Position numbers and translations under genes: made by a program. Below are positions 15,213 to 64,000 of a stretch of 64,000 nucleotides of DNA, one piece after another. The notes beneath the pieces are model-generated. The model worked only from the letters and a program-made list of their open reading frames with translations. It did not search any database and was not told the origin of the DNA. The first letter of the stretch is position 1; the number at the start of each line of letters is the position of its first letter. Source of the DNA: Macrostomum lignano (taxonomy: Eukaryota); contig NIVC01000172.1 in the NCBI GenBank assembly GCA_002269645.1, forward strand, positions 334,558 through 398,557, written 5' to 3'.

Positions 15213-15254
15213 GTGCACGACCGCTTTTATCTACCTTGTTACGAATTGTACCTG

Positions 15255-16307: not shown

Positions 16308-16457
16308 GGTCGCGTCCTGGTCTCAGTCGGTCGCGTGCTGCGAATCTACGATTTGGGCAAGCAGAAAATGTTGCGCAAATGCGAGACCAAAGCCCTGCCC
16401 AACTATATTGTGTCCGTAGCGGCTTTCGGCGACCGCGTGGTCGCTGCCGATGTGCAG
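16308..16457 (+). CDS. SF3B3: SF3B3 exon 9
   Basis: GRVLVSVGRVLRIYDLGKQKMLRKCE...VVAADVQ; AG/GT boundaries. Confidence 0.96.
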
Positions 16458-16629
16458 GTGAGAAATTGTAGCACACAGTCTGAGCTTAGTAATATTAGTT
16501 CATTTCTTTCGTTCCGCAGCAAATTATTCCATTAAACTCCAATTATATGCTGAATAGATAAGAGTAGCTAATAAGAGTTGAATTTCCTGTTTTATTATTA
16601 CATTAAAATATTTAATTAATATATGTACA

Positions 16630-31758: not shown

Positions 31759-31781
31759 AGGGCACTGCCCAACCTGCCGCA

Positions 31782-34700: not shown

Positions 34701-35105
34701 GCACCGTACCAAGGTCCCTACCCGGTAGTGAAGCGACTGCCGAAGTTTTTCATCATCGAAACAGCCGCAGGACGTCAGGAGTCGGTCTCCATCGACCGCC
34801 TGAAGCCTTGTCGATCAACACCGCAGTCTGCACCTGACAGACGAAGAGCATCTCCGACAGCCGACCCTCCCAACAGCGAGTCGACGGTGCCACAGGAATC
34901 AACATCTCAGTCGGGCACCAGGGAAGACGACATTAGCGACCTTAGCACGACAGCACCGACGGAGGCAGGTTCGCAGCAGACAGAGCCGGAGCGAACCAGG
35001 ACGCGAACCGCGATCCATCAGCAGCAACCACCACCATCACCAGTACGTACCAGGAGCGGCCGTAGAGTGCAATTTAAACCTAAAAATGACTATTTCTACT
35101 TTTGA
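31782..35105 (+). CDS. pol: Pol (PR-RT-RH-IN) of the CsRn1-like element, in the -1 frame relative to gag
   Basis: [10 protein letters not shown] (PR); YVDD (RT); TDAS/DHKPL (RH); HQLGH/CATC zinc motif, [26 protein letters not shown] and PYQGPY (IN). Confidence 0.97.
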
Positions 35106-40120: not shown

Positions 40121-40299
40121 TTTATGTTTAGAAGTTTTGTGTTTTGAGGTGTTTTAATAAAAAAAATCTTTTTTGCCCTACTAAGATTCGAACCCAGGTC
40201 GCTACATTAGCATTCCAGTCTGTTCGCATCTGGGCTATCTTTTTCAATTGGAGAACATAAATTGTGGCCCTTATAATTCAATTCTTACAGCAAGTCAAT

Positions 40300-43200: not shown

Positions 43201-46200
43201 ACCATCACTTTAGCAATGGTTCACCAGCAGTTTAGCAATGGTTTAGCATCACTTTAGCAATGGTTTACCATCACTTTAGCAATGGTTTACCATCACTTTA
43301 GCAATGGTTCACCAGCAGTTTAGCAATGGTTCACCAGCAGTTTAGCAATAGTTCACCAGCAGTTTAGCAATGGTTCACCAGCAGTTTAGCAATGGTTCAC
43401 CAGCAGTTTAGCAATGGGTTCACCGGCACTATTCCGCAAAATCTGCATAGGATGCAATCATTATTGTCACAGGTCACAAAGATAAATTCGCTGCTTCAAT
43501 GCAGGCTCGAACTGCTGACATCAAAGCATTCTGCTTAGCTTCTGCCGGATACTGCCTGCCTACTGCGGCTGTTTTGCCTATTGACATGTGGTCGAAATAA
43601 TCTAGTTTAGCAACTTCAGCCGTTTGAAGTTAACCCCCAGAAATAGGCATTTATCCCTACAACAACCTGAAATTATCCCTGCATCTAATCCCGCAAAAAG
43701 ACTGCAGTTATTTCTTAGCAGCCGGCATTTATCATCCACTTTGCATTCTACAACTTTTACTAAAATTAAGCATGTATACCCTCAGCTCATAGAATTGTCC
43801 TCTTAGCAAAAAATATTTCACTTAGCAGCCTGCAGTAATCCCCTCAACAACTTGTACTTAATATTCCACAGTTAATATCCACTCAAAGCTCAATAGTTAG
43901 TTATTAGCCTCAGAAGTCTGCCATTATCCCCCTATTAGTCGGCAGTTTTCCCTCTCAGCAGTCTGCAGCTATACGCTCATACGTCTGGAGGAACTACCTC
44001 AGCAGTTTGCAGTTGTTTCCCCTTTGCAATCTGCAATGATCCCTTCGACAGTCTGCAGTTCCCCTAAGCAGTCTGCAGTCATTCCATTTGTAGTCTACAA
44101 GTGTTCAATTAACAATTTTCAGTCATCCTCTCAGCAGCCTGCAGTTCTTCTCTCAGCCGGCTCCTCAGCTCCTCAGGAAAATGCAATTTGCTCAGCATTT
44201 TACGGCTCACTAATAAATTTTCGATACATATCGGCAGTCTTGCAAAACTCAGCATTTTTCGATACCGTCAGCAGTTTTATTCAGAATGGTCTGCAGTTTA
44301 GCAATTTCATACTTTCATGGAACTATGCCATATACCCATTGATGGGATCAGTACGCTCGTAATACATGTACTCGAAGCAGTTTTTACAAATCAAATTTGC
44401 TTAGCGACTTGTGCTAAATAGCAAAAATACATGTAGTTCATTTAGTGTGCCTTGTTAATTAAGCATAAAACTTCCAATTAGTCGAAGCACAAGCTAAAAT
44501 GAAATAATAATTAGTTCAATTTCAATTGTCCGCTGCGAGCCAGACTCTAACCTGGGACCTTACGCCTATCCTAAACCTGGTCCTAGTGCCTACAGTGCGG
44601 CTACTCCGCCTATTGATCGGAGGGCGACAAAATCAGCCATATATGCTTTGGCACTGCAGTGAAATACACAGCAGTGATAGGCTGCTCAGTGCACGGGTTG
44701 CATGCAGGCAGAGTCAATGCGCAGTTAAGTGAAATCTATAAATTAGATTTAAGTCTGGAGGAACTAATTCACAGTCTGCAGTTCTTCTCTGGCCGGCACC
44801 TCAGTCCTCTCAAAAAACTGCAATTTGCTCAGAATTGTACGGCTCACTAATCAATTTTTGATACATATCGGCAGTCTTAAAAAGCTCAGCATTTAGCAGC
44901 ATTGTCTGCAGTTTAGTAATTTCGTACTTTTATGGAGCTAGACAATACCTATTGATGGGATCAGTTATACTCGAAGCAGTTTTAACAAATCAAATTTGAT
45001 TAGTGGCTTGTGCCGAGTAGCAAAAAATGAATTGCGAATTAATGAAAATGTTTCAATTGAAATTAATCAAAAATGTTCCAATTAGTCGAGGCACAAGCTA
45101 TAAATTATTGAATTATTTTAATTTTAATTATCCGCCGGGGAGGCAGACTCGAACCTTGGACCTTACGCCTAGCCTAAACCTAGTCCTAGTGCCTACAGTG
45201 CGGCTACTCCGCCTATTGATGGGAGGACAACAAAATCAGCCATATATGCTTCAGAACTGCAGTTAAAATACATAGCAGTGATAGGCTGCTCAGTGTGTAG
45301 GCGTACAGGCGGAGCCAATGCACAGTTGAGTGAAATCTATAAATAGCAATTTTCTATGGAGTCCGCCAGTCAGAGCCAGGGTCAGAGTGTACACACGCAG
45401 CCACTGAGCATTTTTTCTCCTTGCACACTGCAACCAGTATTGAAGCTTACACAGTGGAGAGAGAAAAGTTATGGCGCAATCATAATTGGAATTGGAATTC
45501 AGCCAGTCCAGTCAAGAATTCAAGCTAGTTTGCCCTTCCATTAAAAGCATTGGGAAAACTCGTTTTTCGAATATTTGATACCTTTAGCATTAAAGCCAAT
45601 TAAAGAAATTTTAACTGTCTTCTTTCCAGATAATTACAAATCTTTTCGTGGAAACGCGATTAAAATTGGTCAATTGGTTCTATCTCTAGAACGTTATGCA
45701 AATACTAACACAAATTCTCTTCGAGTGAAAGTCACACGAAGCAGCTATGACATAATCAAATACTCAGGCAGTCAGCATCAGTCTCATTTAAAGTTAGCAA
45801 TATGGTTACGCAATTTCTGTCTTTCAACTTGGCACAGTGTTTTCAACTTGTTGTGATGCAATCTTTATCAAAATCAGAATTCAGTCAGTCGGTTTTTTCT
45901 CTAGCATTCTTACAGCGCATTTCAAGTCGAAAGAGCTGCTTGACCTTTGCAAAAACACATGTTTTTCGAATATTTAATCCCTTTAGCATTGAAGCAGATA
46001 CAAGAAATTTTAACCATACAATCCCAGGCTGATTACAAATCTTTTGGCGAAAATCGGTCGAGAATTGCGATCTCTAGAGCGTTATGGACATACAAACCTT
46101 AGAGATTTAGTATATTTTTAGATTTTAGAAGATTTAGATTTAGATTTAGATTTAGATTAGATTTAGATTAGATAGACTAGCCATTTAGCCCCCCTCTGGG

Positions 46201-48200
46201 GAGCCTTAAAAATGACACCAATTGGTTTGTATTTTGGCAAAACAGCAACCTTACTATAATTATCCGAAATGTTGATTTCCATTAATCAAAAATTACCTTT
46301 TCTCACGTTTAAAAAAATAAAGTTGCCATGAATCAGAACTTTTATTAGCCAAAAAGTTTCCTTCATCAGCACAAAACCCTTTCTCAATCAGCAAATAGTG
46401 CTTATCCGTTCAAGCACAAACTCTTAGTGAATATCGTCACTGGCCGGGGCATATTCTGATCCGCAGCAGGAGCTCAAAATGCAAATCCCTGACGGCCTTA
46501 GACCCTCTCTGTTTATTAGCCTAAATCAATGAATCAAACCTTTAATAAATGCGCTGCTGGTATTTCCTTTTAGCATAAATCAGCATCACTTCTGTGTACT
46601 TTTTCATTATCTAAATTTCATGAGCTACTTGAGCCGTACTCTATCTTACTATCTTACACTATCTTACTATCTTACAATCGCCCAATAACCTTGTAACCCC
46701 CCCCCCCCAAATTCAGCCATCGTCCATGAGCCTTGACATATCAGCAATTCCCCCAGTAAGCCTTGACATATCAGCAATTCCCTTAGTAAGCCTTGAGATC
46801 TCAGAAATTCCCCCCATAAGCTCTGAGATCTCAGCAATTGCCCCCCGGTAAGCCTTGATATCTCAGCAATTCCCCCAGTAAGCCTTGACATCTCAGCAGT
46901 TATCCCATTAAGCCTCGACATCACAGCAATTAAACTCGAGCCTTGACATCACGCAATTCTCCCAGCGCAGTAAGCCTTGACATACCAACAACCCAACTCC
47001 CTTTTCCCAAGAATTCAGCAAAACCCTTATAAGCCTTGATAACTCAGCAATTTCTTTATGAGCTTTGTCAACAGAGCGATTCCACAATGAACTTTGATTA
47101 TATCTAAACAAGTCTTTAATTAATGGTCACCCTAACCCATAAGTGAGTCTTGGCGTGTTGGCAATTTCCACCATAAGCCTTGAGCCTCAGCATTAAAGTA
47201 ACTTCCTCAAAAATAAGCTTTGTAATCTGAATTTCACCGAAAGCCTTGACCTGTCAGCAATTCCCCGTAGTAGAGCCAAAGCATTTAAGTTTTCCCCCCA
47301 AGAGCATTTAATCTTAGCAACTCCTCGATGGATCATTATTGATTGTCACGACGATCGCTCTATAATTGAACCAAAACCATAACCCTTGTAGTAGAATTTC
47401 AGCAATTCCCCAATGAGCTTTGGAAATGTTAGCAATTTCCCCATGAGCCTGAAAATTGAGTGACTAACCTTTTGATATCTTGGCACTTGCATTTCAACAA
47501 TTAATTTCAGCAATTTCACAAATGAAACTTGAAATCAAAGCAATTCTCCCCAGAATGACATAATTATAGCAATTCCCCCTGAGCCTTCAGATCTTATAAA
47601 TTCTACCGAGTGTCTTGATATCACAGCAATTTCCCATACCAGCATTATGCTCGTAGCAATAGTCTTAGCAGTCTTAACAGTCTAAGCAAATTCCCGATGA
47701 GACTTTTACGTTCGACAGGGCGCTTCATTTATGATTGATATGATGATTCTTGTTCGCTTTTTCTTGCGTTGCGTTTTCTTCTCTTTAAAAGTTTTTATTA
47801 AAAAATTACAATATTTTACCATAGCTTTCTGCAGTTTAGCAATGGTTCACCAGCATTTCAGCAATGGTTCACCAGCAGTTGAGCAATGCTTCACCAGCAG
47901 TTTAGCAATGCTTCACCAGCATTTCAGCAATGGTTCACCAGCAGTTTAGCAATGCTTCACCAGCATTTCAACAATGGTTCACCAGCAGTTTAGCAATGCC
48001 TCACCAGCAGTTTGCATTAGCAATGGTTCACCAGCATTTCAGCAATGGTACACCAGCAGTTGAGCAATGCTTCACCAGCAGTTTAGCAATAGTTCACCAG
48101 CATTTCAGCAATGGTTCACCAGCAGCTTAGCAATGCTTCACCGGCATTTCATCAATGGTTCACCAGCATTTCAGCAATGGTTCACCAGCAAGCCTATCTT
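40300..48200 (+). repeat. Composite macro-repeat, about 1.3-1.5 diverged tandem copies
   Basis: The gagccttgacatctcagcaattccc blocks at 40560-42500 recur at 46730-47650; the 21-bp ttagcaatggttcaccagcagt arrays at 42640-43420 recur at 47830-48190; the anchor aaatcagcatcactt occurs at about 40435 and about 46576. Confidence 0.85.
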
Positions 48201-48783: not shown

Positions 48784-51315
48784 CTCGGCCATCAGATACG
48801 AAGCGAACGAGGTGACCCCCAAACAGACGGCCCGGACGCCCCTTTCGAGATCGACGAGCTCCGCGCCGCTATCCGATGTCTCAAATCAGGGAAGGCTGTG
48901 GGAACCGACGGTGTCTCCAACGAGATGCTTAAACGCCTCCCGCCGGCCGCTGACAAAGCCTTACTCAGCCTCATCAACCGCACCTGGCGGGAGGGCAAAA
49001 CACCGACCAGCTGGCGAATTGGCACCATTATACCGATCCAGAAAAAAGGGAAAGACGCCGCATCACCGGATAACTACCGCCCCGTCGCACTTACCAGCTG
49101 CATCGCCAAGTGCGCGGAGCGCATGGTTCTGGCTCGTCTTAATTATGACCTGGAGAGCCGTGGCGGCCTCACGCCCACTCAAGCTGGTTTTCGTCGCGGT
49201 CGTAGCACCGAGGAACAGCTCGCGCGAGTCTGCCAAGCCATTTTTGACGGCCTCGAGAGTCTACCGGCGCTACGCAGCATCCTCTGCCTCCTCGACTTTT
49301 GCCGAGCGTATGACAGAGTATGGCGCCTGGCCCTGTATGCCAAAATGCACCGCATGGGCATCTCCAAGCGCATCATCCGCTGGATCCGCGGCTTCCTGTC
49401 GGACCGTCACAACGCAGTCCGCTGGGTTAACGCCACGAGCCGCAACAGAGTCTTCCGCGAAGGTCTGCCACAGGGCAGTGTGCTAGCGCCCACGCTGTGG
49501 AATATCTATGTCAACGATTTAGCCCAAGCAGTCGCCGAGGCGAACCCTTTGGTCAGCCTCAGTCTCTACGCCGATGACTCGGCCTTACTGGCGACCGCTC
49601 GCACACTCGACATCTGTGCCAGAGAACTCCAACCAGCCCTGGATGCAGTGGCCGACTGGTGCCGAGATTGGAAAGTCTCCATTAGCACTGGGAAATGCTG
49701 CTACTCCACCTTCACTCTAGCGGCAAATGAAAACAACGGCAAACGGAGAGTGAACCTCCAGATCAACGGCGACAAGCTTGCCTTCGACCCAACACCGACC
49801 TTCCTGGGACTCACTCTTGACGACAGCCTAAGTTTCAGCCACCATGCATCAAAGATCCGTAAAAAGATGGCCGCCCGCAGAAGACCTCTCACTGCCCTCG
49901 CTACCAGATCGGCCGGTGCGGACAGTCAGATCCTCCGCATGGCTTACATCGCCACCGTTCGCTCTGTTGCCGACTACGCGTGCGGGGTCTGGGGGTCTTT
50001 CACTGCAGCCAGCTCTAAGCTGCTGATCGACCGCCAACAGCACAGCTGTGCGCGGATCATCACTGGGTGCCTCCAACTTACTCACATCCGGGACCTGCTT
50101 GCGGTGGCGAACCTGTCGCCCTTCAGCCATCTGGTGCTACAACGTAGTGCGACGCTCAGAGAAAGAATCCTACGTCTCCCGCAGGACACTCCAGCACTTC
50201 AGGTCGCCAAAATGGACACCCGACCACGACTGAAGAATCGAGCCTTTGAGAGCCACCAGAGAACACCGAGAGACCCAAAGGACATCGTCACCGTCCTCCA
50301 CGACTACCAGCGAGAACACCGTGGTTGCTGGCGCCGCGTTAGCCAAGAGCTCGACAGACAGGGGTTGCTCAACGGCCCCACCAGGGAGCCCGCTCCGCAG
50401 CTCCAGCCGCCGTGGACGGCCCACGAAGCGATCACTTTCGACCTCAGTTTGGCTACGCAGTGCAGCCGCAGCCAGCCCCAGAGCCTCCGCAGCGATACTG
50501 CACTGAGGTACCTCGAGGAGCGCGGCTCCCACCCGGTCAGTGTTTGGACTGACGGCTCGGCCGCCGGCGGCACATCGGACGGCACCAGCGCAGCGGTGAT
50601 CATCACCCCATGCTGGGGTCGGGTCGTCACCAGCGCTGCAGGGAACATCTGCAGCAGCACCCAGGCGGAACTCCAAGCCATACTGCTTGCCATCCAGAAT
50701 ACCAGAGAGCATCAATGTATCGACATCTTCACTGACTCCCAGGCGGCCATTTACAACATCATGGCGGGCCAGCGCAGCAACAGCAGAATCGTCTCCGAAA
50801 TTTGGAACCAGAGTAGCGATCACTCCATCCGCATCACCTGGATACCGGCTCACTGCGGCATCCCCATGAACGAACGCGCAGATAGGGCGGCAAGACTGGC
50901 GACCGCTGATCAGAGCGACCATGGTGTCCCCATCATGGCAGCCAGCGCTTACCTCTGCCGGGAAAGACGTGATCTAGACCTCGAGCTTTGGGGCCGTAAG
51001 GCGCCATGGCCAAGACTCCCAACCTTGCCGAGGAAATTTGAGGTCCTGGTCAACCAGCTCCGCGCCGGCTGCAGCAACCTTGCCGCCGCCACTAGACTCC
51101 GACTCGGCCTGTCCGACTCCGACGTGTGCCCGGACTGCGGAGCTCGCGACACCGAGCAGCACATTCTTTTCGACTGCCCACGAGGGTTCGCGGCCCGCCC
51201 CGGCGAACAAGACGCACTCCTGGTTGACGCGAGCCTCACCATCAACCTTCTTCGCAGGCTGGGGCGCATATAGCGCCCCCGTCTCTTGCAGCCCAGCTGA
51301 CATCGAGACGTGCGG

Positions 51316-51582: not shown

Positions 51583-51992
51583 AGCTATGCTGGAATTGTT
51601 GGGACAGCCCCATCCACACTGGCTATGGTGGAATTGTTGGGACAGCCCTATCCACACTGGCTATGCTGGAATTGTTGGGACAGCCCTATCCACACTGGCT
51701 ATGCTGGAATTGTTGGGACAGCCCTATCCACACTGGCTATGGTGGAATTGTTGGGACAGCCCTATCCACACTGGCTATGCTGGAATTGTTGGGACAGCCC
51801 TATCCACACTGGCTTTGCTGGAATTGTTGGGACAGCCCCATCCACACTGGCTATGGTGGAATTGTTGGGACAGCCCTATCCACACTGGCTATGCTGGAAT
51901 TGTTGGGACAGCCCTATCCACACTGGCTATGCTGGAATTGTTGGGACAGCCCTATCCACACTGGCTATGCTGGAATTGTTGGGACAGCCCCA
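51583..51992. repeat. 38-bp minisatellite (gctatgctggaattgttgggacagccctatccacactg)
   Basis: About 10.5 copies; the ORFs here are artefacts. Confidence 0.95.
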
Positions 51993-52649: not shown

Positions 52650-54510
52650 GCTCTAATTAGCTATCGCTCTACAGACTGCAATTCTTGACCAATTTTGATC
52701 GCGCTTTCGCCAAAGGATTTATAGTTATCTGAAAAAAGACAGTTAGAATTTCTTTAATCTGCTTCAATGTTCAAGGCATTAAATATTCGAAAATCGAGTT
52801 TTCCCTATGCTTTTAATGGAAGGCCAAGCAAGGTTGAATTCTTGACTGGCTGAATTCCAAATCTAATTTTGATTGCGCCACAACTGTGTACTGCATATTC
52901 TCGCTATAAACTGACTCTGAGCTTTTTAGGTGGAGGCAGTGTGCCAAGCATTGCGCAGGCACTCTGGAGGGAGAGAGAAATCAGCCAGTGCATTTTAAAA
53001 GTACGTTATTTACATTATTTTGACCCTGGCTGAATGGCGGACTGCATAGACAATTGCTATTTATAGATTTCTTCTCTTAACTGTGCATTGGCTCTGCCAG
53101 CACCAAACCTGTGCACACTGAGCAGCCCATCACTGCTATGTATTTGACTGCAATGTCGAAGCATATATGGCTGATTTTTGCGCCCTCCAATCAGTAGGCG
53201 GAATAGCCGCAGTGTAGGCACTAGGACTAGGTTTAGGCTAGGCGTAAGGTCCAAGGTTCGAGTCCGCCTCGTGAGCCGATAATTAAAATTAAATAAATTA
53301 GTTCACTTATAGCTTGCGCCTCAACTAATTGAATCATTTTTGATTAATTAGTAAGCCACACTCAATGAATGATTTTTGCTATTCAACACAAGTTGCTAAA
53401 CAAACTTGATTTTGTCAATTTGAATTTGATTTGATTTCAGCCAGTGCATTTCAAAATTTGATTTGTAAAAAACCTGCTTCGTGTATTATTGCTCCCGAAT
53501 TGCAGACGATGCTGCTAAATAGCTAAACAGCTGAAGGTACTGCTAAATGCTGAGCTGCGCAAAAGACTGCCGATATGTATCGCAAAATTGATTAGTGAGC
53601 TGTACTAAATACTGAGCAAATTATCAGATTACTGAAAGAATCATTGCTGAGAAGACTCATTCATGCAGACTGCAATGGGAAAAATTGAAAAAAACTGCTG
53701 AGGTATTCCTCCAGACTTATGAGTGTATAGCAGAGCAAGTTGTTGAGGGGATACAAGTAACTGCGGACTGCTGAGTGAATTATTGTAGCTTGCCGATGCT
53801 AATGAAAGTTGTAGACAGCAAGGTGGATACTCGTACCTGCAGGCTGCTAAGAGTATGACTGCAGTCTGTTTGCGGGATTAGAAGTGATAGCTAATTTCAG
53901 GTTGTTGTGGGGATAACTGCCGATTTCTGAGGGGGGGGGTTAACTTCAAAATGTGAAGTTTCTAAACTTCTAGAATAGTATAAGTCTTTTAGTAGAAGGT
54001 CGGCTGTTCGAGTCTACATTGAAGTAGCGAATTTATCTTTGTGACAATAATCATTGTTTCCTATGGGGGTTCATGCAAATTTTTAACATTTTATTTTGTA
54101 CACTTATGCTTTTGCTGGGGCTACGCGAAGCTTCAAAAGCAGCGCTTATCTGCTGTAAGTGCTAATTTGCAAAGGGTATTGCTAATCTGGGTGAGCAGCG
54201 CTAATCGGGGAGAGCAGTGCTATTCTGACGCATATAATAAAATAATAAATATGTAAGGGAATTAAATTGAACCTGCAAGTTGCAGAAACATTTTAAATGG
54301 TTTCGATTATCCAGAAGCAATATAGCCATAAGCAAAGATTAGTGCAATGTGCAAAACAGTACTGGTGAACGATGACTAAACTGCTGGTGAAGCATTGCTA
54401 AACTGCATTGCTAAACTACATTGCTAAACTGCTGGTGAACCATTGCTAAACTGCTGGTGAACCATTGCTAAACTGCAGAAAGCTATAGTGAAATATTGTT
54501 TTTTTTTATT
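52650..54510 (-). repeat. Inverted copy of the macro-repeat segment at about 43400-46090 plus the 21-bp array
   Basis: For example 53930-54060 is the reverse complement of about 43445-43680; the DLTPSLNLVLVPT pseudo-ORF appears on opposite strands at about 45150 and 53254. Confidence 0.85.
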
Positions 54511-54512
54511 AA

Positions 54513-57342
54513 TGAAGTGATACATTTTGACTCAAGAAAGTTCCCATCCAGATTGAATGTATCTTAACCAATGAATGCGCTCCAAATAGCAAAAGCTGAG
54601 GACACGACCCCAACCTCAACCAATGAAAAACAGTTATGTACCATCCAATGCGATCAAGACTGAAAAGTACTATAAAAGCTCATGTTAACCAAGCAAGAAG
54701 CTCGCCCCCTTTCTCGCTCCGCCTCTCCTCCCCTTTTCTCTCCTTCGCCCTTCTCCCAGCCTACCTCCTTTTGACTAATTTTGATTAACATAGTTAGGGT
54801 CTCAACCCAAACACCAAAACTGATAAATTGACTTACTAAAGCTAAACCAACACCCAATCCACGTTTTACAATAGACTGAACCTTCGGTTCACCCGAACAA
54901 CTAGAAACACCTTGTGACTTAAATCGAACGAGCTTCTTATTTGGAATTCCACCTTAGACATTATATTTTTGTGAGAAAACGTCTCGAGATTGTGACCATC
55001 AAATACAACGGTCTGTAAGTTACCATCAAGTGTTTGCATCATCAGGAAAAGTCAGTTGAATCCGCCGCCTCAGTTATTTGGCTCTCACATTGATATTTGA
55101 AGTAGACATAGAGCCATAGAAGTGAGAGACCAGAAGAAGAACAGTAACATATATTTTAAAATATTTCACTGGTTCCCTGACCGTACTTTTCCTCCGATGC
55201 GTCTCACCACAATAGCCGCTATGCCCTGCATGGGGTAGACAGCTATAGGCGTGGCTGATGGGTGTGAACGGTTGGACTGGCTTCCCCCCCCCCTCCCCTT
55301 TGAGCATTCGAGACTGTCAGTAATACATATTCGAAGAATGAATCGTAAATCACGAGCTCTTAAATTCAAATTCAGAATTCAAATCGGTTCTAAGTTTTGT
55401 CCAGTGCACTGAGACCTGATTCAAGTTTTTTTCAGATTCAAAGGATCCATGAAAGTCAATAAATTATCGTTCCGGAACAATTTCAATTTCACTTCAATTC
55501 AAGAAACGTCGTCGAACGTCTGACATCGAGTTCTTATTCTCAAGCCTCAGAGCTTCAATGCAGAAATTCAATTCAGTTATTCGGATCCTCAATTGTTCAA
55601 GCTTCAAAGCTTCGATTTTTCAAAGACCGCGGCATCATCAATTGTTCAAGTTTATTTAATGTTGGACGCCTCTTTCTTCACTGCCTTTCCGTAGAATAGC
55701 AAAGTCTACTCTGGATTTCCTCAAGTAAACTTGAAACTCTCCAAAGTGACTGAGCCATTCGTTTCCTCCTCGGTTTTTCCCAGTGTGTGGCCACATCTAG
55801 AAAACTGGCTTATCTCAGATTCTCTGCGCCGTTAAGCGCCCGAAAGAAAGAACGAAAACGCAAAAAACCTGACGAGCTATTCCAACAAAGTCACTACAGT
55901 AAACATCAATCAAAATCTGGAACCACCAATTTCTTGCTGTCAGAAAACTTTTTCGCTTATCAGACAGGTTGCTTGTCTAACCATTCATTATCTTCCTTGA
56001 TTAAAGCCCAAGATTCGCTGTCTGCCAAGCCTGCGTGCTTCATCTGGAAAACCTTGCTTATTTTCGTAGACCGCTTGCCTAGCCTTCCATCACTTTTTCT
56101 TGATTAAACAATCCAAACTCACTGTTTGCAAAGCCCACGAGCCCCATCCATCAAATCCTCATTGACCCAAGTTTGTTTTTTCGGATTGCTGATTCTGGCG
56201 GTTGCCCTTTATAGATCATTTTGATGTAGAGATTAGGATGCTAGGGAATTTTCTTGTGTGTTTATTCAGCTTCAGTGCCCTCCAACAAATCCTTATCTTA
56301 AACAAGCTGCCCAAGTCAGACTTCGCGCGCATACTTAATCTCCCAGAGAGACCTCCTTTCTTAATTAAAGCCATCAATCAACTTCATTTCCCACGAGAAA
56401 ATCTTTTCCTTAATCAAACTGTCCAGGCCAGCCTTATCCTGCCACTTCATCACCGGCCCAGCGATGTTTTTTCTGCAATCACTGACAACCGACCTCCCCT
56501 GGGATCTGTCCCTAGCTCCCTCCCGTTTCGCATGATGGATTAAGACCAAAATAACCTCAACTTTTCTCCCATCCCTCTACTGCCAGTGGCGCGAGCTTTT
56601 TGGTAACCCCATATCCCCTTCGCTTATGACAAACTCAAAATGATCATTAGATCGCAAAAAATAATAAAATTTGAAAACACAAAAAAACAATACCATTGCT
56701 TATAGTTCATCTCGTATAATCCGTACTGCTCTTATCATGTTAAATTTGAAAAATGATCAATCCGATCAATGAAAAATTATAAAATTTTCAAAAAATTAAA
56801 AATAGCAAATTTATAAAACTACAAAAACATTACTCTACGTTTGCTTAAAATTATGAAATCAACCCCCTAGCTGAAACTCGTCAGATAGTTCAAAATTCAA
56901 ATTCGAAATTCAAAAAGCCAGAACAAATTCTCAGAAGAAAACTGCCGACTTCAAGAAAAAGAAAACTGCCGATTTCAATGATACAAATTCGATTTTATTG
57001 GCCACCACTGATGTCCGTCTAGTCCAACATTCAGGAGCTCCTTTATCAAATTCAGTTTTCATTAAAGTTTCAGAACCGATCAAAACGGCAGTTCAATTCA
57101 AAATTTCAGAGTTCAAAATTTCAAAATTCAAAGTTTCAGAACCGATCAAAAGGCAGTTCAATTCAAAATTACTTCGATTTTCAAAGCTCGTCGCAGATCA
57201 CAGTTAAAAAATTACACAGTCTCTCTTTTTCTCCCTTCCCCAGCCAGTCCGCCAACCGCAACCCTGAAAGCCATTGCCGTTTGCTCACTTTGAATTTGAC
57301 ACTCTACTTTGCTATTAGTTACATTTTTGTGCTATTGTTGCC
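54513..57342 (+). mobile_element. Probable 5' LTR and leader of the env-bearing Gypsy-like element (boundaries uncertain)
   Basis: Similarity to the host repeat stops at about 54512, followed by TG; 2.8 kb of non-coding sequence then precedes gag. There is no second LTR in the window and no PBS was confidently identified. Confidence 0.45.
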
Positions 57343-57867
57343 TTGAAATTATTGATTGAATTCTTGTTAATGACCACACCTGTCCGAGATTTACGTTCCG
57401 GACCAGTTTTTCAAAGCTCAAATATTAACAGACCCCCTGAACAAAATTTAGAAACTTCTGACCGCCAAATAGGTGAACAGCTCCCACGAAATAGTTCACC
57501 AGTACCTAACCTGTTTATACCAGATAACGTTGAGTTTAATAACCCTCTCGCGGATCATTTTGAATACAACCGTGCACACTCACCAGCACCCAGTTCCATC
57601 CTAACAGACGCGGACGAAACAGTTCAACCAGCCCCAAACGATATTGCTGAAGAATCTACTCTAGATATGGCTGATCAGGACGGCGCTCCCCATGTTGATG
57701 CTGCAGCGACAAATGCTGTCCGTGAACTTACTGATGTTATGAACCGCAGTCTGCAATTGCAATCAAACCATCCCGTCTCAGCTACTGCTCTTGCTGAAAT
57801 TCGTCAATCCCTGAAAGGAATCGACCAAATGCATGACTTCGCTCCTTCACTGAAGAGTTCGACTTGA
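57343..57867 (+). CDS. gag: Gag N-terminal segment (frameshifted into the next ORF)
   Basis: Starts with an RDLRSG-type motif; continues via a one-base shift near 57845 into FTEEFDLITRSFGL. Confidence 0.65.
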   Translation: MKLLIEFLLMTTPVRDLRSGPVFQSSNINRPPEQNLETSDRQIGEQLPRNSSPVPNLFIPDNVEFNNPLADHFEYNRAHSPAPSSILTDADETVQPAPNDIAEESTLDMADQDGAPHVDAAATNAVRELTDVMNRSLQLQSNHPVSATALAEIRQSLKGIDQMHDFAPSLKSST

Positions 57868-60146
57868 TCACACGCTCCTTTGGACTATCGGAGAACGCAA
57901 AGATTCGGCTCTTCCCGCGACTACTGAATGACCTTCTTAAACTCGAATACAGTCGCCTCTCTGCCGCAGTCCAAGCCTCTTATCCAGCCACCATTGAGGC
58001 ACTGTCTCAACGCCTTCGGGAAGTAACCATTGGCTCGGCTCTAACGCTGCATAATGCAACAACCCGGAAACAACAGTACGGCGAACCGTTCCTGTCTTAT
58101 TTCACCGATATTCGTCGAAAGCTCAGGTCAGCTATGCCGGAAATACCGGAAGAATTTCCGGAAGGTGCCGGTCCGGAAACACCACCCGCGAACCAAGCTG
58201 TCATCGACCAGCGCAACCGAGACTTCCTTGCTACCCTGATGGCTACGACTATCAACAATGCTCTACCCTACATCAAACGAGAACTCTTGAAGCAAAATAT
58301 CACCACGGAAAGTACGCTAATCAACAAGGCCATCCGCGCCGAACAAATCCGCGACTCCACCATGGACTCTGATGGCACTGACTTGAAAGCTCTCACAGAG
58401 CGTCTAACTACCTTAGAAAAAACGACGAAGGAAGCCAATCAGCAGGTGGTTGCCTCCCTGCAAACACAAACCAAGCCACCTATCGCTAATATGCAACAGA
58501 AGCCCACTTGTTATCATTGCGGCCGACCTGGACATTATGCCGCCGATTGTCGTCGAAGGAATGACCAACAACCTCGTCCCTTCCGACCTAACTCTGGCGA
58601 TCGAAGAACCGCAGCTCACTATGGCTCGGACGCCCCGCGAAATCGTTACCAGCAGGGACCGCCACGATTGACCTGTAACTATTGCCGAAAACCAGGACAC
58701 TCTATTAACCAGTGCCGACTACGAGCCCAACGTACACAAGGCTACGGTCCACCGGCGACACAACAATCACGATTTCCACCCCGTCAAGACTATGGAAACC
58801 GGCCTCAGCAACGCTATCCGCCTCGATACAACGGCGCCAACAATCAACGACAACCTCCGAGATTTGCGCAACAACAATATCCACCGATACGCGCCATCAC
58901 TGCTCAGGACCCTGAAACGTCCCACCCAGGATGGAATCAACAGCCGCAGATTGGATGGACGACTCACGACGCTCCCGAGTCTGCCCAACTGATGCACATT
59001 GCTACAGTTGATGAACGCCCACCGACTTTTGGAAACGAAATTCGCTACTCTGGAGACGCTAAGCAGCTGAAATCCTTACTCAAAAAACCGACTACTGCTT
59101 CTGCGACTATCAACTCTATCCGCCTTTGTACGGTTGAAAGAATGACTGACACCTACACTCCACCGACCAGCAACAACAACCGCGAGAAAACCGTGAAAGC
59201 TTCCGTCGGAATTCGCCGATCACTACTGACACTTTTTCTCCTGTGCCTAGCAACTTCACTCTTCGCACTAGCCAACGCTACGCCGGTAACGACGTCAACT
59301 CCACCATCGATTGAGAGACAATCTCACGAGGGCTTCATTGACACACCAATGGTCTGTCCGTACAACCAGATCCCACGAATTTTCACGATACCACATGAGA
59401 TCCGTTGCGAACAGCTCAAACACCAAACAACGCCGACACTCCCGTTGAAACTGGAACTTTACACAACAAACGTAGAAACCAGTTCCCTGGTTATGACTGT
59501 CTGTTTCCGCGAGAAAATCACTATTAGATGTGATAAGGCGGTGATAAGAACCTGGACATCCGCCCTGGTAGAGTTGGAACCGCAACCAGTCACTCAAGCT
59601 GATTGTGAAAACTGGGCACGAACAAAGCTATCGCCTGATGGATCATTAGTGTTAAAGACTGCGTCAACTCAGTCTATCCAACGCCTGCAATCGACATTCA
59701 ACACGCAAAATGCTGTGCGTTGCACTCCCGGTTCCCATTCAGAACAAATAGTAACAACAGTGATCACCGGAATCCCAGCCTACTCAACAGCAGATCAAAA
59801 AATGGAATCTTTGTCCTTCCCAATGGACAACTGCAAACTCGCCGACAAATTTTGTACAATTAAAACAACTGCACAAGAAATGCGAGCTTTCAACCTACCT
59901 TTGCCGATACTAACATCCCCCTGGGATCCTTTGGAAACTGAAGCAATCTACCAAATTGACGTGAAAGGACCAAGACATCTAAATCTTATTTGGACACCTC
60001 CACCGCTCGCTGATTGTCCTTTAAAACCATTTCGTACTCTTGAAGGTAACTTAAACTCCGGCTTGTTCTTAACTAATGACAAACATTGGACTAACCTTCA
60101 ACCCAGTGCCGTCGACTCACACTCTCACCTGCACTGGCGTCCGTAA
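57864..60146 (+). CDS. Gag (capsid-like plus two CCHC knuckles) fused in frame to a signal-like hydrophobic segment and a Cys-rich glycoprotein ectodomain
   Basis: CYHCGRPGHYAADC (58509) and CNYCRKPGHSINQC (58674); RRSLLTLFLLCLATSLFALANA (59214-59279); then VC..., C.REKITIRC, VTQADC, C..C and LIW, with no stop in between. Confidence 0.85.
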   Translation: MITRSFGLSENAKIRLFPRLLNDLLKLEYSRLSAAVQASYPATIEALSQRLREVTIGSALTLHNATTRKQQYGEPFLSYFTDIRRKLRSAMPEIPEEFPEGAGPETPPANQAVIDQRNRDFLATLMATTINNALPYIKRELLKQNITTESTLINKAIRAEQIRDSTMDSDGTDLKALTERLTTLEKTTKEANQQVVASLQTQTKPPIANMQQKPTCYHCGRPGHYAADCRRRNDQQPRPFRPNSGDRRTAAHYGSDAPRNRYQQGPPRLTCNYCRKPGHSINQCRLRAQRTQGYGPPATQQSRFPPRQDYGNRPQQRYPPRYNGANNQRQPPRFAQQQYPPIRAITAQDPETSHPGWNQQPQIGWTTHDAPESAQLMHIATVDERPPTFGNEIRYSGDAKQLKSLLKKPTTASATINSIRLCTVERMTDTYTPPTSNNNREKTVKASVGIRRSLLTLFLLCLATSLFALANATPVTTSTPPSIERQSHEGFIDTPMVCPYNQIPRIFTIPHEIRCEQLKHQTTPTLPLKLELYTTNVETSSLVMTVCFREKITIRCDKAVIRTWTSALVELEPQPVTQADCENWARTKLSPDGSLVLKTASTQSIQRLQSTFNTQNAVRCTPGSHSEQIVTTVITGIPAYSTADQKMESLSFPMDNCKLADKFCTIKTTAQEMRAFNLPLPILTSPWDPLETEAIYQIDVKGPRHLNLIWTPPPLADCPLKPFRTLEGNLNSGLFLTNDKHWTNLQPSAVDSHSHLHWRP

Positions 60147-61893
60147 GACGTTGTACCTTTCAACACAAGGTCTATACGTAGACATCCTCGACAACAAAGA
60201 AGCAGAATTTCTCGCCACCTTACGAAGCCCATTAGAAGAAGCTACTCCAAAACCTCAAACTAGCGAAGAAACCACTTCTTCGAGACAAAAACGTCGTTCA
60301 CCACCAACGATACTACCAACGCCACCAACAATATTACCCGTTCAGCAATCGACGACTCAACATCCTTTCACTACGACAACTCAGTCACGACAATTCCTAC
60401 CGCCGCAACCTTTACGACAAGAGCGACCTGATCATCCACCGACGTCAAGCACTTCTACAACAATGACGCCAACAACTACGATACTAACTACTACAAAATC
60501 AACACCAACAACTACAATTTTGACAACGACAACACCACCGAGTACAACGACAACACCACCGACTACAACGACAACACCACCGACTACAACAACAACACCA
60601 CCGACTACAACGACAACACCACCGACTACAACGACAACACCACCGACTACAACGACAACACCACCGACTACAACGACAACACCACCGACTACAATGACAA
60701 CACCACCAGCTACGACGACAATGCCAGCGACTACAACGACAACAATACCTACCACAACCGTAACACCGACAACTTCAACAACCACAACTGCTACAACCTC
60801 AGCAGCAACAACGACAGCAGGTCAACTACGACGACAACAAAAGTGACGACACAACCTCGTACCACCACCACTTTACCGCCAACAACCTCAACCTCTAGCA
60901 GCACAACCAGTGCACCAGCAAAGTCTGCAACCTCAACCTTCACACAACTCACCAGCGACAACAACAATCCACAACTGGCTTCTATTCATACGAATCTAGC
61001 AGTTCCATCACGAACCACAAGGTAGTCAACCGGATCTCCTACTACTACCACGCAACAAGCGAAGCACAGATGACAAAACCATCGCAGCCCCTTCAGGCAA
61101 CTCTACTGCGCAACTTTCATCAACGTTCGCATCCGCTGAACTTCTTGCTGGACAACTACAAGGAGCTGCTAGTAAAGCTCGAAAAGATCTTCTCCAAGTA
61201 CAGAGGCAGCTGCAACTACTCAATGCATGATGTACGCAACTAATCTCAAGTACAATCGACAGTTATACTACACACAACCAACGCTCGCTGCTCGACTCTT
61301 ATTAAATGATCCTTTCTTGCGAGCTAGATCCATTGCTGGATACCTCTTCGTCTACCAGTGCAAACCCCTACATCAGTTCGCTTTGTCCAACCAAAGTACA
61401 AGACGAACCAATGCTTCACGCGCCCCCACTGGAATTCCGCCTACAAAATTATACTGTTCTTGGATTTTTGGACACAACGACTCGTATTGTCTCCACAGCT
61501 ACTCCAGCTCTAATCTCATGCGACGCCTTCCCATACTACTACCTGCCTAAACAATCGATGCTATTCAAGACCACACTAAATTTTTCGAGATTTGAACCCA
61601 CAACCGCTAATGTCAGATCCGATGAAAACTATCGGTTGTCCGATTTGCAAACTTCCGTCTCCGAGAGCATCTTCAAACCTATGGGAGACATCAATTATAC
61701 TTCACTTCGTAGCCCAATAACGGTGACCGACCTAATGCACCAGTTCATGCAAACTCGCGATTTTCTGATTACAGTTTTCAAACTTCCGAATCGAACACGA
61801 CACAGAACAGCACATGCTGACAGTGCATTCCTGGACTCAAAACTAGCTCTCTCAATCTATGGTCTTCGTCGATATTCAACTGGGATCGACTAG
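60076..61893 (+). pseudogene. Central env-like region broken by several frameshifts: mucin-like Thr/Pro tract, furin sites and a class III-like helix
   Basis: IGLTF...C...STQG; RQKR (60283); (TTTPP)n; RNKR (61051); LAGQLQ; TQPTLAARLLLNDPFLRARSIAGYLFVYQC; TNQCFTRP; ISCDAFPYYYL. Confidence 0.75.
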
Positions 61894-64000
61894 TCGCAAA
61901 CTATCAAGAAAAGTTCGTCTTAACAGCAGCTGTAATCGTCTACATTGCCGTTATTATCTTCGTGTGCAATCTTGGCCGACTCTGCGTCGCCAGCACCATC
62001 CGTTACGGCAGAACGCACACTATACAAGTGCTGCGGCAACAACGAACTCCAACTCGAGTGGAATCACGAAACGACTACTCCCAACAACAGCAACTGATAC
62101 CACCGAGACAAGCGCCAACACCTTCGGCACCCATCGAAACGATTGAACTTCGCGCCACCCTTCCGCCACCACGGAGACCACCACCAGAACCGAAAGTTCC
62201 AAAATGGCCAGCAAACTACTCATACGCCTTTGTTTTGAAGCACCTAACAACAGCAACAATGATCAACCTGTGGTGCCGCAACGCACCGCATACTCGACAC
62301 AGATGCACCGCCCTCATTGACAGCGGCGCCTCGATCTCCTGCATCTCACCGGCATTCGCCAAAAAGCTTCGAGTACCATTACAAGACACCAACATGAACG
62401 CCATTTGTGCAGGAGGACAACAACTAAACCTCAACAAAAAGGCTACTTTTGATCTCGAAATCGATGGACGCAACCACAAGATATCGGCCTTTGTGCTCGA
62501 CACCCCCGACGCTGACTATGATTTGCTCTTAGGAGTAGAAACCTTTAAGTCACTGGGAATACCACTACAATTCGACTACTCGAAAGCGACAGCTAAGCTT
62601 GGCAATGAGCAATTTGCGATGCTCAACTCCATCCAACAGTTGCAAGAAACCTCTGCGGTGATGCAAAACAAGCTAGAGTTACCACCACAGACAACGCACC
62701 AAGTCACGCTGAAACTCTCTTCTCGACATGAGCCAACGATTCCTGTCCTGTTCGTCCCTAAGGACCACACGATCCAGAAACACCAGTTGATGATACCAAC
62801 TTGCCTTGTTTCTGTCAACCCGGACGGACAAACTATCACTGTGGAAATTGCCAACCCGTCGCTGACAACGCAAACCTTGCATCCTCAACAAGTCATTGGA
62901 AATCTGGCTAACATGTCTGACTACAACATCGTGCGCCCAGCAGCTCAAATCAACAGTCTCCGCACGCTGCAACAAGAAGCACCTACGACTGACATGATCC
63001 GTACTCAACTCAAACAAGCCAACCAGCACCTCTCAACCGAGCAGAGTGAACAATTAGTTACTCTAATGAACAAGTACCGTGACGTCTTGGCACTACTGCC
63101 AACCGACATGGGTTGCTCTACCCAATACACGGCTCACCTGCATCTACACCCACACTCTGAGCCAGTCACGTCCAGACCCTATCCAATCGCTCATGGACTA
63201 CAAGAACGGTTTGATGAGCTCATCGAAAACTTCCGTCAAAAAGGAATCATCAGTCCGAGTGAATCGGAATACTCAAGTCCATGTCTTCTCGTGGAAAAGA
63301 AGACGCTCGACGCTCAAGGTCGCCGACAACTAAGACTCGTGACGGATTACCGAAAACTGAACAAGCTAATTCGTGCTCCTAGCATCCGACCTCCGAAGAT
63401 TCCGGATTTGCTACATCGATTGAAGAACGCTAAACTGTACACACTCTGTGACCTAGCAGATGCTTTCTACCAAGTTCGGATCGATCCAGAAAGCACAAAA
63501 TACACTGCGTTCATTGCACCCAACGGCCTACTTTGGGAATTCAATCGACTACCTCAAGGACTCAAGTCCAGTCCTAGCTTAATGTGCCGTCTTGTAGCAT
63601 TGTTAACAGCTGACTCTCCAAATCAGATTGCCTACTTGGATGACGTCATGCTCATCGCCGAAGACTTCACCGGCATGCTCAAAGAAATCGAACGCTTCTT
63701 CCAAAAGTTACGACATCATGGATTGCGAATTTCACTACGAAAATGCATCTTTGCTAAAACAGAGGTACAATATCTTGGATTTGTTGTTTCTGCTCAAGGC
63801 ATTAGACCAGCCCCAGCCTTATCGAGAAAATCAAACCTTTCCTGTGCCTCAACGGTTAAACAACTACAATCTTTCCTTGGACTTGCAAATTTCTACCGAA
63901 CGCACATTGCTGGCTACTCACGAGTAGTACAGCCACTTCTGAGTATTATCAAAAATACTTCAAAACCCAACAAATTCGTCTGGACGAACGCTGCGCAAAC
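61821..64000 (+). CDS. pol: Env TM helix, aspartic protease and RT in one open frame, running off the window edge
   Basis: Manual translation shows no stop: FVLTAAVIVYIAVIIFVC (61914-61967); ALIDSGASIS (62319); DLLLG; RPYPI; SPCLLVEKK; RLVTDYRKLN; FYQV; LPQGLKSSP; YLDD (63633); YLGF; SFLGLANFYR. Not in the ORF track because no stop lies inside the window. Confidence 0.92.

What the first reader, a model, noticed from the sequence alone, without database searches (positions are those of the whole stretch)
57343..64000. Retrovirus-like element with env between gag and pol, apparently one Gag-Env-Pol polyprotein
Seen: the frame carrying two CCHC knuckles runs without a stop through a signal-peptide-like segment (59214-59279) into a Cys-rich ectodomain. 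The frame carrying the TM helix (61914-61967) runs without a stop into the DSG protease and YLDD RT. Established: env-bearing Metaviridae and retroviruses normally place env downstream of pol in a separate ORF. Inference: an internal signal sequence and a stop-transfer TM would leave Gag and Pol cytosolic and Env lumenal, with signal peptidase and the element's protease doing the processing. That is a flavivirus/alphavirus-like polyprotein strategy in an LTR retroelement, and possibly an undescribed lineage of infectious retroelements.
Basis: partly seen in the sequence, partly recalled or inferred. Interest (0 to 1): 0.95.

Follow-up and report, generated by a model that had tools for sequence, protein, structure and literature searches.

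The report
Flatworm retrovirus-like element, gag-env-pol fused
This is a copy, broken as assembled, of a retrovirus-like element of the flatworm Macrostomum lignano. Intact relatives encode capsid protein, a herpesvirus-gB-like envelope protein and the replication enzymes as one continuous membrane-spanning protein; the gene order is published, but the single-protein layout is not discussed in the text I could read.

Summary
In the window, the frame with two CCHC knuckles runs on through a signal-like segment into a Cys-rich domain, and the frame with the TM helix runs into PR (DSG) and RT (YLDD). Between them, env as assembled shows at least 7 frame changes and no stops, and gag shows 1, so this copy does not encode one polyprotein. 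The element begins at the 5' LTR (54513), not at 57343, and is about 14.8 kb long; the window cuts it inside pol.

The host is Macrostomum lignano. Six sibling copies keep each junction (gag-signal, env-TM, TM-PR) in frame in several copies. A sister family, in at least 4 loci, has an uninterrupted 2852-2859-codon ORF reading Gag-signal-Env-TM-PR-RT-RH-IN. A third, distant lineage has the same layout with one internal stop.

Env shows weak but specific homology to herpesvirus gB (profile E = 3e-5) and is under purifying selection. RT is Ty3/gypsy-like.

The single-polyprotein reading is therefore supported by architecture. Processing and topology remain inferred. The "undescribed lineage" claim is not supported: GAG-ENV-POL Ty3/gypsy elements with gB-type env are published for Platyhelminthes, Nematoda and Bryozoa (PMC13524379). 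The fused ORF is not discussed in the text I could read.

The parts
54513..55168 (+). 5' LTR (656 bp, TG...CA)
   Evidence: It matches the 3' LTRs of sibling copies downstream of pol: L002 at 99.85%, L001 at 95%. The full copy L004 has two 100% identical LTRs and a 4-bp target-site duplication, CTAA.
55170..55186 (+). Primer-binding-site-like TGG... motif 1 nt after the LTR
   Evidence: Read from the sequence. A similar motif follows the LTR of the sister family. No tRNA gene was available to match it.
55169..57369 (+). Long leader of about 2.2 kb with no conserved coding potential
   Evidence: No Pfam hits. ORF translations from the sister family's leader and post-pol region found no match in full copy L004 of the window's family (tblastn).
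57370..59213 (+). gag: N-terminal domain, two CCHC knuckles and a Q/P-rich linker. Broken as assembled by 1 frame change and 0 stops.
   Evidence: Pfam zf-CCHC; break count; 36% identity to the gag of the intact relative P0024.
59214..61967 (+). env, from internal signal to TM anchor. Broken as assembled by at least 7 frame changes and 0 stops.
   Evidence: The same region is intact in sibling L004, within one 1298-codon frame that runs from the signal to beyond PR.
59220..59279 (+). Internal signal sequence: basic n-region, hydrophobic core and an A-L-A motif
   Evidence: Hydropathy. The equivalent segment is present in P0024, P0025 and P0026.
59280..60234 (+). Cys-rich N-terminal ectodomain
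   Evidence: Aligns with P0024, P0025 and P0026 at 37%, 25% and 26% identity, with 7 invariant Cys.
60235..61010 (+). Thr/Pro-rich mucin-like region, including a 21/63-bp tandem repeat at 60523-60786 and an RQKRR motif at 60283-60297
61051..61062 (+). Furin-like RNKR site just before the long helix
   Evidence: The equivalent sites are RIRR in P0024 and RRRR in L008.
61135..61700 (+). gB-homologous core: central helix and the following Cys-containing domain (end bound approximate)
   Evidence: The three-lineage profile A3 hits 9 herpesvirus gB chains, best EBV gB 3fvc_A at E = 3.2e-5. Pfam Monjiviricetes_fusion and Glycoprotein_B match below threshold.
61914..61967 (+). TM anchor (stop-transfer)
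   Evidence: Hydropathy 2.7 over 19 residues. Conserved in P0024 and L008.
61968..64000 (+). Cytoplasmic tail followed by pol, cut by the window end. No breaks in the part held. PR lies at 62298-62549 and the RT domain at 63300-63785.
   Evidence: Pfam gag-asp_proteas, Asp_protease_2 and RVT_1. The best solved relative of RT is Ty3 RT, 4ol8_A, E = 2.5e-38.

Best explanation
The window holds the 5' two-thirds of a roughly 14.8-kb endogenous retrovirus-like LTR element (Ty3/gypsy, Metaviridae-like) of the flatworm Macrostomum lignano. The gene order is gag-env-pol, and env is a class III fusion glycoprotein of the herpesvirus-gB type.

Shown: In intact relatives all three genes form one ORF of about 2850 codons. 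That ORF has exactly two strongly hydrophobic segments, one after Gag and one before PR.

Inferred mechanism:
- The genomic RNA is translated into a single polyprotein.
- Gag emerges in the cytosol.
- The internal signal targets the ribosome to the ER and threads the Env ectodomain into the lumen, where it is glycosylated on the mucin-like region, disulfide-bonded, cut by signal peptidase after the signal, and cut by furin before the central helix.
- The TM helix stops transfer, so the tail, PR, RT, RH and IN stay cytosolic.
- The element's aspartic protease then releases Gag and Pol on the cytosolic side.
- The result is equimolar, membrane-tethered Gag, Env and Pol.

The window copy as assembled cannot do this. 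It carries 1 frame change in gag and at least 7 in env. Many of these may be long-read assembly errors.
For: - Host and copies: pol is 97-98% identical to M. lignano gene models, and six sibling loci were retrieved.
- LTR element: L004 has identical LTRs and a TSD; domain order is PR-RT-RH-IN; RT is closest to Ty3.
- Single ORF: P0024 (PAA86625.1) is 2852 aa from one uninterrupted 8559-nt ORF. P0027 (found on 2 contigs) and P0028 are more than 99.9% identical to it.
- Third lineage: L008 has a 2695-codon frame with one internal stop.
- Fourth lineage: P0026 also joins Gag to signal plus env.
- Junction continuity among siblings: gag-signal is in frame in 4 of 5 assessable copies, env-TM in 4 of 6, and TM-PR in 3 of 7.
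- Hydrophobic segments: only two in P0024.
- gB homology: profile hits to 9 gB chains, best E = 3.2e-5, with concordant sub-threshold Pfam hits in all three lineages.
- Purifying selection on env: 59-70% of substitutions between copies are synonymous against 25.6% expected, giving omega of about 0.15-0.25. Between families, envC is 55% identical and gag 36%.
- Recent activity: 100% identical LTRs in L004, and near-identical intact copies of the sister family.
Against: - No copy of the window's own family is intact as assembled. The best, L004, has 2 frame changes and 1 stop.
- No transcript or protein data exist here, so spliced subgenomic mRNAs cannot be excluded.
- Signal-peptidase, furin and PR cleavages and the topology rest on hydropathy and motifs, not on dedicated predictors or experiments.
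- gB homology is weak in sequence, and both AlphaFold models of the env N-domain were unusable (pLDDT 33 and 39).
- Equimolar Gag:Pol is unusual for retroviruses. From my own knowledge, not tested here, it does occur in single-ORF elements such as Tf1.
Confidence: 0.7

Rival explanations
1. The ORF is continuous in the DNA, but the proteins are mainly made from spliced or trans-spliced subgenomic RNAs. Examples would be env removed as an intron to give a Gag-Pol mRNA, or gag's start joined to env. On this view the giant polyprotein is a minor or non-functional product.
For: From general knowledge: retroviruses and errantiviruses express env from spliced mRNA, copia makes a gag-only spliced RNA, and M. 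lignano uses trans-splicing. A 1:1:1 stoichiometry is unusual. No expression data were available here.
Against: Frame continuity at both junctions is kept in 3-4 lineages that have diverged to 25-40% identity in gag and env. Separate expression would not require that. No initiator Met is conserved upstream of the signal. Neither junction carries a stop in any intact relative.
Confidence: 0.22
2. The window copy, and perhaps its whole family, is a dead, decaying provirus, and the apparent long frames are remnants with no present function.
For: All 7 copies of this family have breaks as assembled: the window has 8, and the others between 3 and 23.
Against: Breaks are almost all 1-nt indels with hardly any stops. 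The indel-to-substitution ratio is far above natural values, for example 35 indel events against 54 substitutions between the window and L002. That pattern points to long-read assembly errors. L004 has 100% identical LTRs. Substitutions between copies are strongly synonymous-biased. The sister family is intact in at least 4 loci.
Confidence: 0.3
3. The env segment is an independent insertion or an assembly chimera inside an ordinary gag-pol element.
For: Env has no detectable relatives by simple searches, and its composition differs from the rest in having a mucin-like repeat.
Against: The same gag-env-pol layout, in frame, occurs in 7 loci of this family, in the sister family and in two further lineages from other sources. 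Env is not bounded by repeats or a TSD. Env co-diverges with gag and pol.
Confidence: 0.02
4. The middle protein is not a gB-type fusogen but some other secreted or membrane glycoprotein, for example one captured from the host.
For: Pfam hits are below the curated cut-offs. The N-domain has no hit at all. No usable 3D model was obtained.
Against: The nine best matches of the three-lineage profile, all those below E = 0.01, are herpesvirus gB chains. They align about 170 residues in register, covering the central helix and conserved Cys. The furin site sits immediately before that helix, as in gB. The published flatworm GAG-ENV-POL elements carry gB-type ENV (PMC13524379).
Confidence: 0.06

Closest known systems
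GAG-ENV-POL Ty3/gypsy 'errantiviruses' with HSV/gB-type ENV in Platyhelminthes, Nematoda and Bryozoa (eLife 2026, PMC13524379; Sacco et al. 2022, J Gen Virol 103:001739, not held and not read)
   Same: Ty3/gypsy pol, env placed between gag and pol, gB-type env with signal/TM flanks and an optional furin site, a flatworm host, and multicopy recent insertions.
   Different: The text I could read treats GAG, ENV and POL as three ORFs and does not discuss a single fused ORF or polyprotein topology. I could not check whether M. lignano elements are in its supplementary lists.
Insect errantiviruses (gypsy, ZAM, Idefix) and vertebrate retroviruses
   Same: LTR, PBS, gag, PR-RT-RH-IN and an envelope fusogen.
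   Different: Their env lies downstream of pol and is expressed from a spliced mRNA. The insect env is F-type (class I-like), not gB-type. Basis: PMC13524379 and general knowledge.
Herpesvirus glycoprotein B and Monjiviricetes (chu-/nyami-like) fusion glycoproteins (class III)
   Same: Sequence-profile homology over the central helix and the following domain, with a furin site before the helix.
   Different: Very low identity. The N-terminal domains are not recognisable by sequence. Here the protein is embedded in a retroelement polyprotein and carries a large mucin-like insert.
Flavivirus/pestivirus-type polyproteins (works-like comparison only)
   Same: A cytosolic capsid protein is followed by an internal signal, lumenal glycoprotein(s), a stop-transfer TM and cytosolic enzymes, with a mix of host signalase/furin and viral protease cleavages. 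This is inferred here.
   Different: Those are RNA viruses with no relationship to this element. Here there is a single TM pair, an aspartic protease and reverse transcription.
Single-ORF Gag-Pol LTR elements such as Tf1, and Atlas virus of hookworm, a belpaovirus with an envelope glycoprotein in the pol ORF (both recalled from memory, not tested)
   Same: Structural and enzymatic proteins are translated as one polyprotein. In Atlas the env is also in frame with pol.
   Different: Tf1 has no env. Atlas is BEL/Pao with a class II phlebovirus-like Gc placed after pol.

Membership tests
Ty3/gypsy (Metaviridae-like) LTR retroelement | Direct LTRs ending TG...CA, flanked by a short target-site duplication | tested here: met
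   The window's 5' LTR is 54513-55168. L004's LTRs are 100% identical with TSD CTAA, and L007's TSD is ATAT. The window's own 3' end lies outside the window.
Ty3/gypsy (Metaviridae-like) LTR retroelement | tRNA primer-binding site next to the 5' LTR and a polypurine tract before the 3' LTR | tested here: inconclusive
   A TGG... motif lies 1 nt after the LTR, and a purine-rich run precedes the 3' LTR in L002 and L004. No tRNA sequence was available to match.
Ty3/gypsy (Metaviridae-like) LTR retroelement | pol domain order PR-RT-RH-IN, with RT closest to Ty3/gypsy | tested here: met
   Pfam domain order in the window, in sibling copy L001 and in P0024. The best solved RT relative is Ty3, 4ol8_A at 2.5e-38, ahead of foamy virus, caulimovirus, MLV and HIV. 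No full phylogeny was made.
Published GAG-ENV-POL gB-type elements (PMC13524379) | env located between gag and pol | tested here: met
Published GAG-ENV-POL gB-type elements (PMC13524379) | ENV homologous to herpesvirus gB (class III) | tested here: met
   Profile A3 against PDB gave 9 gB chains, best E = 3.2e-5. Pfam PF24664 and PF00606 matched below their cut-offs. The fold was not confirmed because the AF2 models were of low confidence.
Published GAG-ENV-POL gB-type elements (PMC13524379) | Ectodomain flanked by a signal peptide (or TM) and a TM domain | tested here: met
   Kyte-Doolittle hydropathy shows exactly two hydrophobic segments in P0024 and in L004's env frame. No SignalP or DeepTMHMM was available.
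Published GAG-ENV-POL gB-type elements (PMC13524379) | GAG, ENV and POL as separate ORFs, as the paper describes them | tested here: not met
   P0024 and L007 form one uninterrupted ORF of 2852 codons. This may be a difference of description rather than of biology.
Canonical retrovirus / insect errantivirus organisation | env downstream of pol in its own ORF | tested here: not met
   Env precedes PR. The post-pol region has no env-like features or Pfam hits.
Flavivirus-like polyprotein strategy (mechanistic analogy, not membership) | Signal-peptidase and viral-protease processing of a membrane-spanning polyprotein | not testable with these tools
   Only the hydrophobic segments, small residues at -1/-3 after the signal core, and R-x-K/R-R motifs were seen.

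The most novel reading that the evidence does not exclude
A lineage of invertebrate retroviruses translates Gag, a class III (gB-like) fusogen and Pol as one membrane-spanning polyprotein. It is present in the flatworm Macrostomum lignano and on at least two contigs of unidentified host: one binned into a bacterial genome from a metagenome, one from an assembled public sequencing run. An internal signal and a stop-transfer anchor set the topology, so that equimolar Gag, Env and Pol are tethered to the same membrane. This expression strategy is not described for reverse-transcribing viruses in the literature I could read. The lineage appears to have been active very recently in M. lignano.
Probability: 0.5. 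Interest if true: 0.75.

Novelty: new variant of a known kind. Interest (0 to 1): 0.6.

Why it matters
If the fused ORF is translated as such, retroelements have found a third way to express an envelope protein. The known ways are a spliced env mRNA after pol and separate ORFs.

This third way would couple capsid, fusogen and enzymes in cis on one membrane. It bears on three questions: how retrotransposons turn into viruses by capturing fusogens, how Gag:Pol stoichiometry constraints can be relaxed, and how gB-type fusogens moved between DNA viruses, RNA viruses and retroelements.

M. lignano is a laboratory model with genomic and transcriptomic resources, so the question can be addressed with descriptive data. 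For genome annotation, the work shows that several M. lignano "hypothetical proteins" of about 2850 aa are complete Gag-Env-Pol polyproteins.

Tried and rejected
- Word-indexed homology searches with the env N-domain and with gag found nothing. The exhaustive HMMER search was needed to find relatives.
- Single-sequence searches of env against Pfam and PDB found nothing meaningful. The N-domain profile A1 also found nothing in PDB.
- AlphaFold2 on the env N-domain gave pLDDT 33 alone and 39 with a 4-sequence alignment. I therefore ran no fold search, because matches to such models are meaningless.
- Scans of metagenome and viral contig collections with the env C-part profile found no relatives.
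- No second copy or LTR partner exists inside the window, and the window has no tRNA genes.
- I considered a programmed -1 frameshift at the env/TM junction, because the window and L001 share a frame offset there. I rejected it because 4 of 6 siblings and all three intact or near-intact lineages are in frame there, and reading the sequence by eye showed no canonical slippery heptamer; no systematic scan was run.
- I considered the post-pol region as a displaced env. It has no similarity to env and no Pfam hit.
- Sacco et al. 2022 is not held, and the supplements of PMC13524379 are not held.
- The report gives counts only.

Full report
**1. What is in the window**

Translation of 57000-64000 shows two long open frames on the + strand.
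- A 769-codon frame holds two CCHC knuckles at 58509-58550 and 58674-58715 (Pfam zf-CCHC, E = 2.3e-8). It runs on through a Q/P-rich linker and a hydrophobic segment (SLLTLFLLCLATSLFALA, 59220-59279) into a Cys-rich region.
- A 726-codon frame holds a strongly hydrophobic helix at 61914-61967, a Pro-rich tail, an aspartic protease (ALIDSGAS, 62310-62333) and RT (YLDD, 63633-63644; RVT_1, E = 6e-24). It runs off the window end.

These parts of the observation are correct. Between them the coding path is not continuous. Measured against intact pieces of sibling copies, env in the window changes frame at least 7 times with no in-frame stop, and gag changes frame once. The middle also contains:
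- a Thr/Pro-rich mucin-like stretch with a 21/63-bp tandem repeat;
- two R-x-K/R-R motifs;
- a heptad-like helix followed by a Cys-containing domain.

**2. Host, copies and true extent**

The pol piece is 97-98% identical to Macrostomum lignano gene models such as BOX15_Mlig007858g1. Through those models and their cluster members I retrieved six sibling loci from assembly GCA_002269645.1, L001 to L006, at 93-98% identity.
- A 656-bp sequence at window 54513-55168 recurs downstream of pol in the siblings. It is therefore the 5' LTR (TG...CA), followed 1 nt later by a TGG... primer-binding-like motif.
- L004 is a full copy of about 14.75 kb with 100% identical LTRs and a 4-bp target-site duplication.
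It has a leader of about 2.2 kb, its gag ATG is at 57370, and it continues past the window through RH, IN, a post-pol region of about 2.8 kb and the 3' LTR.
- L001 and L002 have different 3' flanks, so they are separate insertions.

**3. Is the family's architecture one ORF?**

I placed 43 peptide markers, and then 10-residue tiles, on the three forward frames of each copy as it stands, and recorded only which open frame each marker falls in.
- The gag-signal junction is continuous in 4 of 5 assessable copies.
- The env-TM junction is continuous in 4 of 6 copies. The window and L001 share an offset there.
- The TM-PR junction is continuous in 3 of 7 copies.
- L001 has a 1308-codon frame from the gag start through the signal, Cys-rich domain, mucin region and furin site into the helix.
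- L004 has a 1298-codon frame from the signal through the whole of env, the TM and PR.

Minimum breaks as assembled, given as frame changes and in-frame stops:

| Copy | Frame changes | In-frame stops | Note |
|---|---|---|---|
| window | 8 | 0 | 1 in gag, 7 in env, none in the part of pol held |
| L001 | 5 | 0 | |
| L002 | 12 | 2 | |
| L003 | 22 | 1 | |
| L004 | 2 | 1 | |
| L005 | 8 | 0 | partial copy |
| L006 | 22 | 1 | |

The near absence of stops and the very high indel-to-substitution ratio suggest that many of these "frameshifts" are long-read assembly errors. For example, there are 35 indel events, mostly 1 nt, against 54 substitutions between the window and L002. I could not test this.

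**4. Intact relatives**

An exhaustive HMMER search with the window's env N-domain found three proteins.
- **P0024** (38% identity) is M. lignano PAA86625.1. It has 2852 aa, encoded by one uninterrupted 8559-nt ORF in L007.
  - Its order is Gag (two knuckle-like motifs), hydrophobic segment 659-677, Cys-rich domain, mucin-like region, RIRR, helix, TM 1483-1510, tail, PR, RT, RH and IN.
  - These are the only two strongly hydrophobic segments in the protein.
  - P0027 (found on two contigs) and P0028 (2859 aa) are more than 99.9% identical.
  - L007 has LTRs 99.3% identical and a TSD.
  - This sister family is therefore intact in at least 4 loci and young.
- **P0025** (27% identity) lies on a 9-kb contig binned as a Kangiellaceae MAG, which is surely eukaryotic DNA. 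That contig, L008, carries a 2695-codon frame with the same order, Gag-signal-Env-TM-PR-RT-RH-IN, and one internal stop.
- **P0026** (31% identity) comes from a short contig in a Logan assembly of a public run. It again joins Gag to signal plus env.

Gag-env continuity is thus seen in four lineages and env-pol continuity in three, at 25-40% identity in gag and env. No initiator Met is conserved before the signal.

**5. What env is**

Single sequences gave no Pfam or PDB match.
- A profile of the post-furin half from three lineages (A3) hit nine herpesvirus gB chains and little else. The best were EBV gB 3fvc_A at E = 3.2e-5, then BALF4 and KSHV, MHV-68 and other gBs. The alignment covers about 170 residues over the central helix and the next domain, with the Cys residues in register.
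- Individually, all three lineages gave sub-threshold hits to Pfam PF24664 (Monjiviricetes_fusion, best E = 6e-5), and P0024 alone to PF00606 (Glycoprotein_B, E = 0.01), all in the same region.
- The N-domain aligns across four lineages with seven invariant Cys. It has no recognisable relative, and its AlphaFold models were unusable.

I conclude that env is a gB-type (class III) glycoprotein. This is the type reported for flatworm GAG-ENV-POL elements (PMC13524379).

**6. Is env functional?**

Between L004 and the other copies, 59-70% of env substitutions are synonymous against 25.6% expected at random, giving omega of roughly 0.15-0.25. The value for PR is lower still.

Between the two M. lignano families, identity by region is as follows:

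| Region | Identity |
|---|---|
| gag | 36% |
| envN | 40% |
| envC | 55% |
| PR | 57% |
| RT | 79% |
| RH | 75% |
| IN | 73% |

Env has therefore been maintained by selection at least as strongly as gag.

**7. Mechanism**

Shown: one ORF in intact relatives, two hydrophobic segments placed so that Gag and Pol fall on one side of a membrane and Env on the other, basic residues on the Gag side of the signal and after the TM, small residues at -1/-3 after the signal core, an R-x-K/R-R site before the gB central helix in all three lineages, and a mucin-like insert.

Inferred: co-translational ER targeting by the internal signal, signal-peptidase and furin cleavage in the lumen, stop-transfer at the TM, cytosolic cleavage by the element's protease, and 1:1:1 membrane-tethered Gag, Env and Pol.

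The main rival is expression through spliced RNAs. It cannot be excluded without RNA data, but it does not explain why frame continuity at both junctions is conserved.

**8. Comparison with the literature**

PMC13524379 (eLife 2026; bioRxiv 2023) reports that Ty3/gypsy elements of Nematoda, Bryozoa and Platyhelminthes carry only HSV/gB-type ENV and are arranged GAG-ENV-POL. It cites Sacco et al. 2022 for nematodes, which I could not read.
- The gene order and the env type are therefore known.
- The paper also notes ectodomains flanked either by a signal and a TM or by two TMs.
- A search of its text for the words that would describe fusion ('fused', 'in-frame', 'same reading frame', 'polyprotein', 'single ORF') found none.
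- I could not check whether M. lignano is among its elements, because the supplements are not held.

**9. Verdict**

This copy is broken as assembled. I rate it a new variant of a known kind, of moderate to high interest.

Noticed in passing
Beyond the window: L001 11983-13071, L002 10605-11606 (between the IN stop and the 3' LTR): There is a + strand open frame of about 330-360 codons after pol with no Pfam hit. Among copies it shows third-codon-position enrichment (about 45-54% synonymous against about 25% expected) and few indels, so it may be a real accessory gene. Nothing similar is present in the sister family.
   Followed up: partly
Window about 62100 (cytoplasmic tail between TM and PR); P0024 residue 1564: A P-S-A-P motif of the late-budding-domain type occurs in the tail of both M. 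lignano families. P0024 has another in the C-terminal part of Gag at residue 566. It could be chance in Pro-rich sequence.
   Followed up: partly
Window 54509-54512, and L002 just after its 3' LTR: The window's 5' LTR is 99.85% identical to L002's 3' LTR, and both flanks read TTAA. L002, whose contig starts inside the element, may be the same or an allelic/duplicated insertion.
   Followed up: no
Window 55169-56627, compared with L001 1-2583 and L003 1-858: L001 and L003 diverge from the window upstream of the position equivalent to window 56628. L001 carries about 2.1 kb of unrelated sequence there with a 259-codon open frame that has no Pfam hit. This points to a leader variant or a nested insertion.
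   Followed up: no
Window 30859-35105 (+): A second, unrelated LTR-retroelement coding region. It has a DUF7041 gag-like ORF followed by an uninterrupted 1107-codon PR-RT-RH-IN ORF.
   Followed up: no
Window 48898-51273 (+): A 791-codon ORF with RVT_1 plus RNase H, resembling a non-LTR (LINE-like) retrotransposon.
   Followed up: no
Window 37202-40129, 42637-43428, 47831-48190, 51584-51990: Large satellite arrays. One has a 23-bp unit in 127 copies, others have 22-bp units, and one has a 38-bp unit. Related arrays flank the L002 copy.
   Followed up: no
Window about 10300-16500 (+) and 19445-20575 (-): Probable host gene fragments: DDB1/CPSF1-type beta-propeller pieces (Beta-prop_RSE1_1st, CPSF_A) and a caspase-domain ORF.
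   Followed up: no
L008 (JAZBNS010000450.1): A 9-kb contig deposited as part of a Kangiellaceae bacterial MAG is a eukaryotic gag-env-pol retroelement, so it is a binning contaminant.
   Followed up: partly
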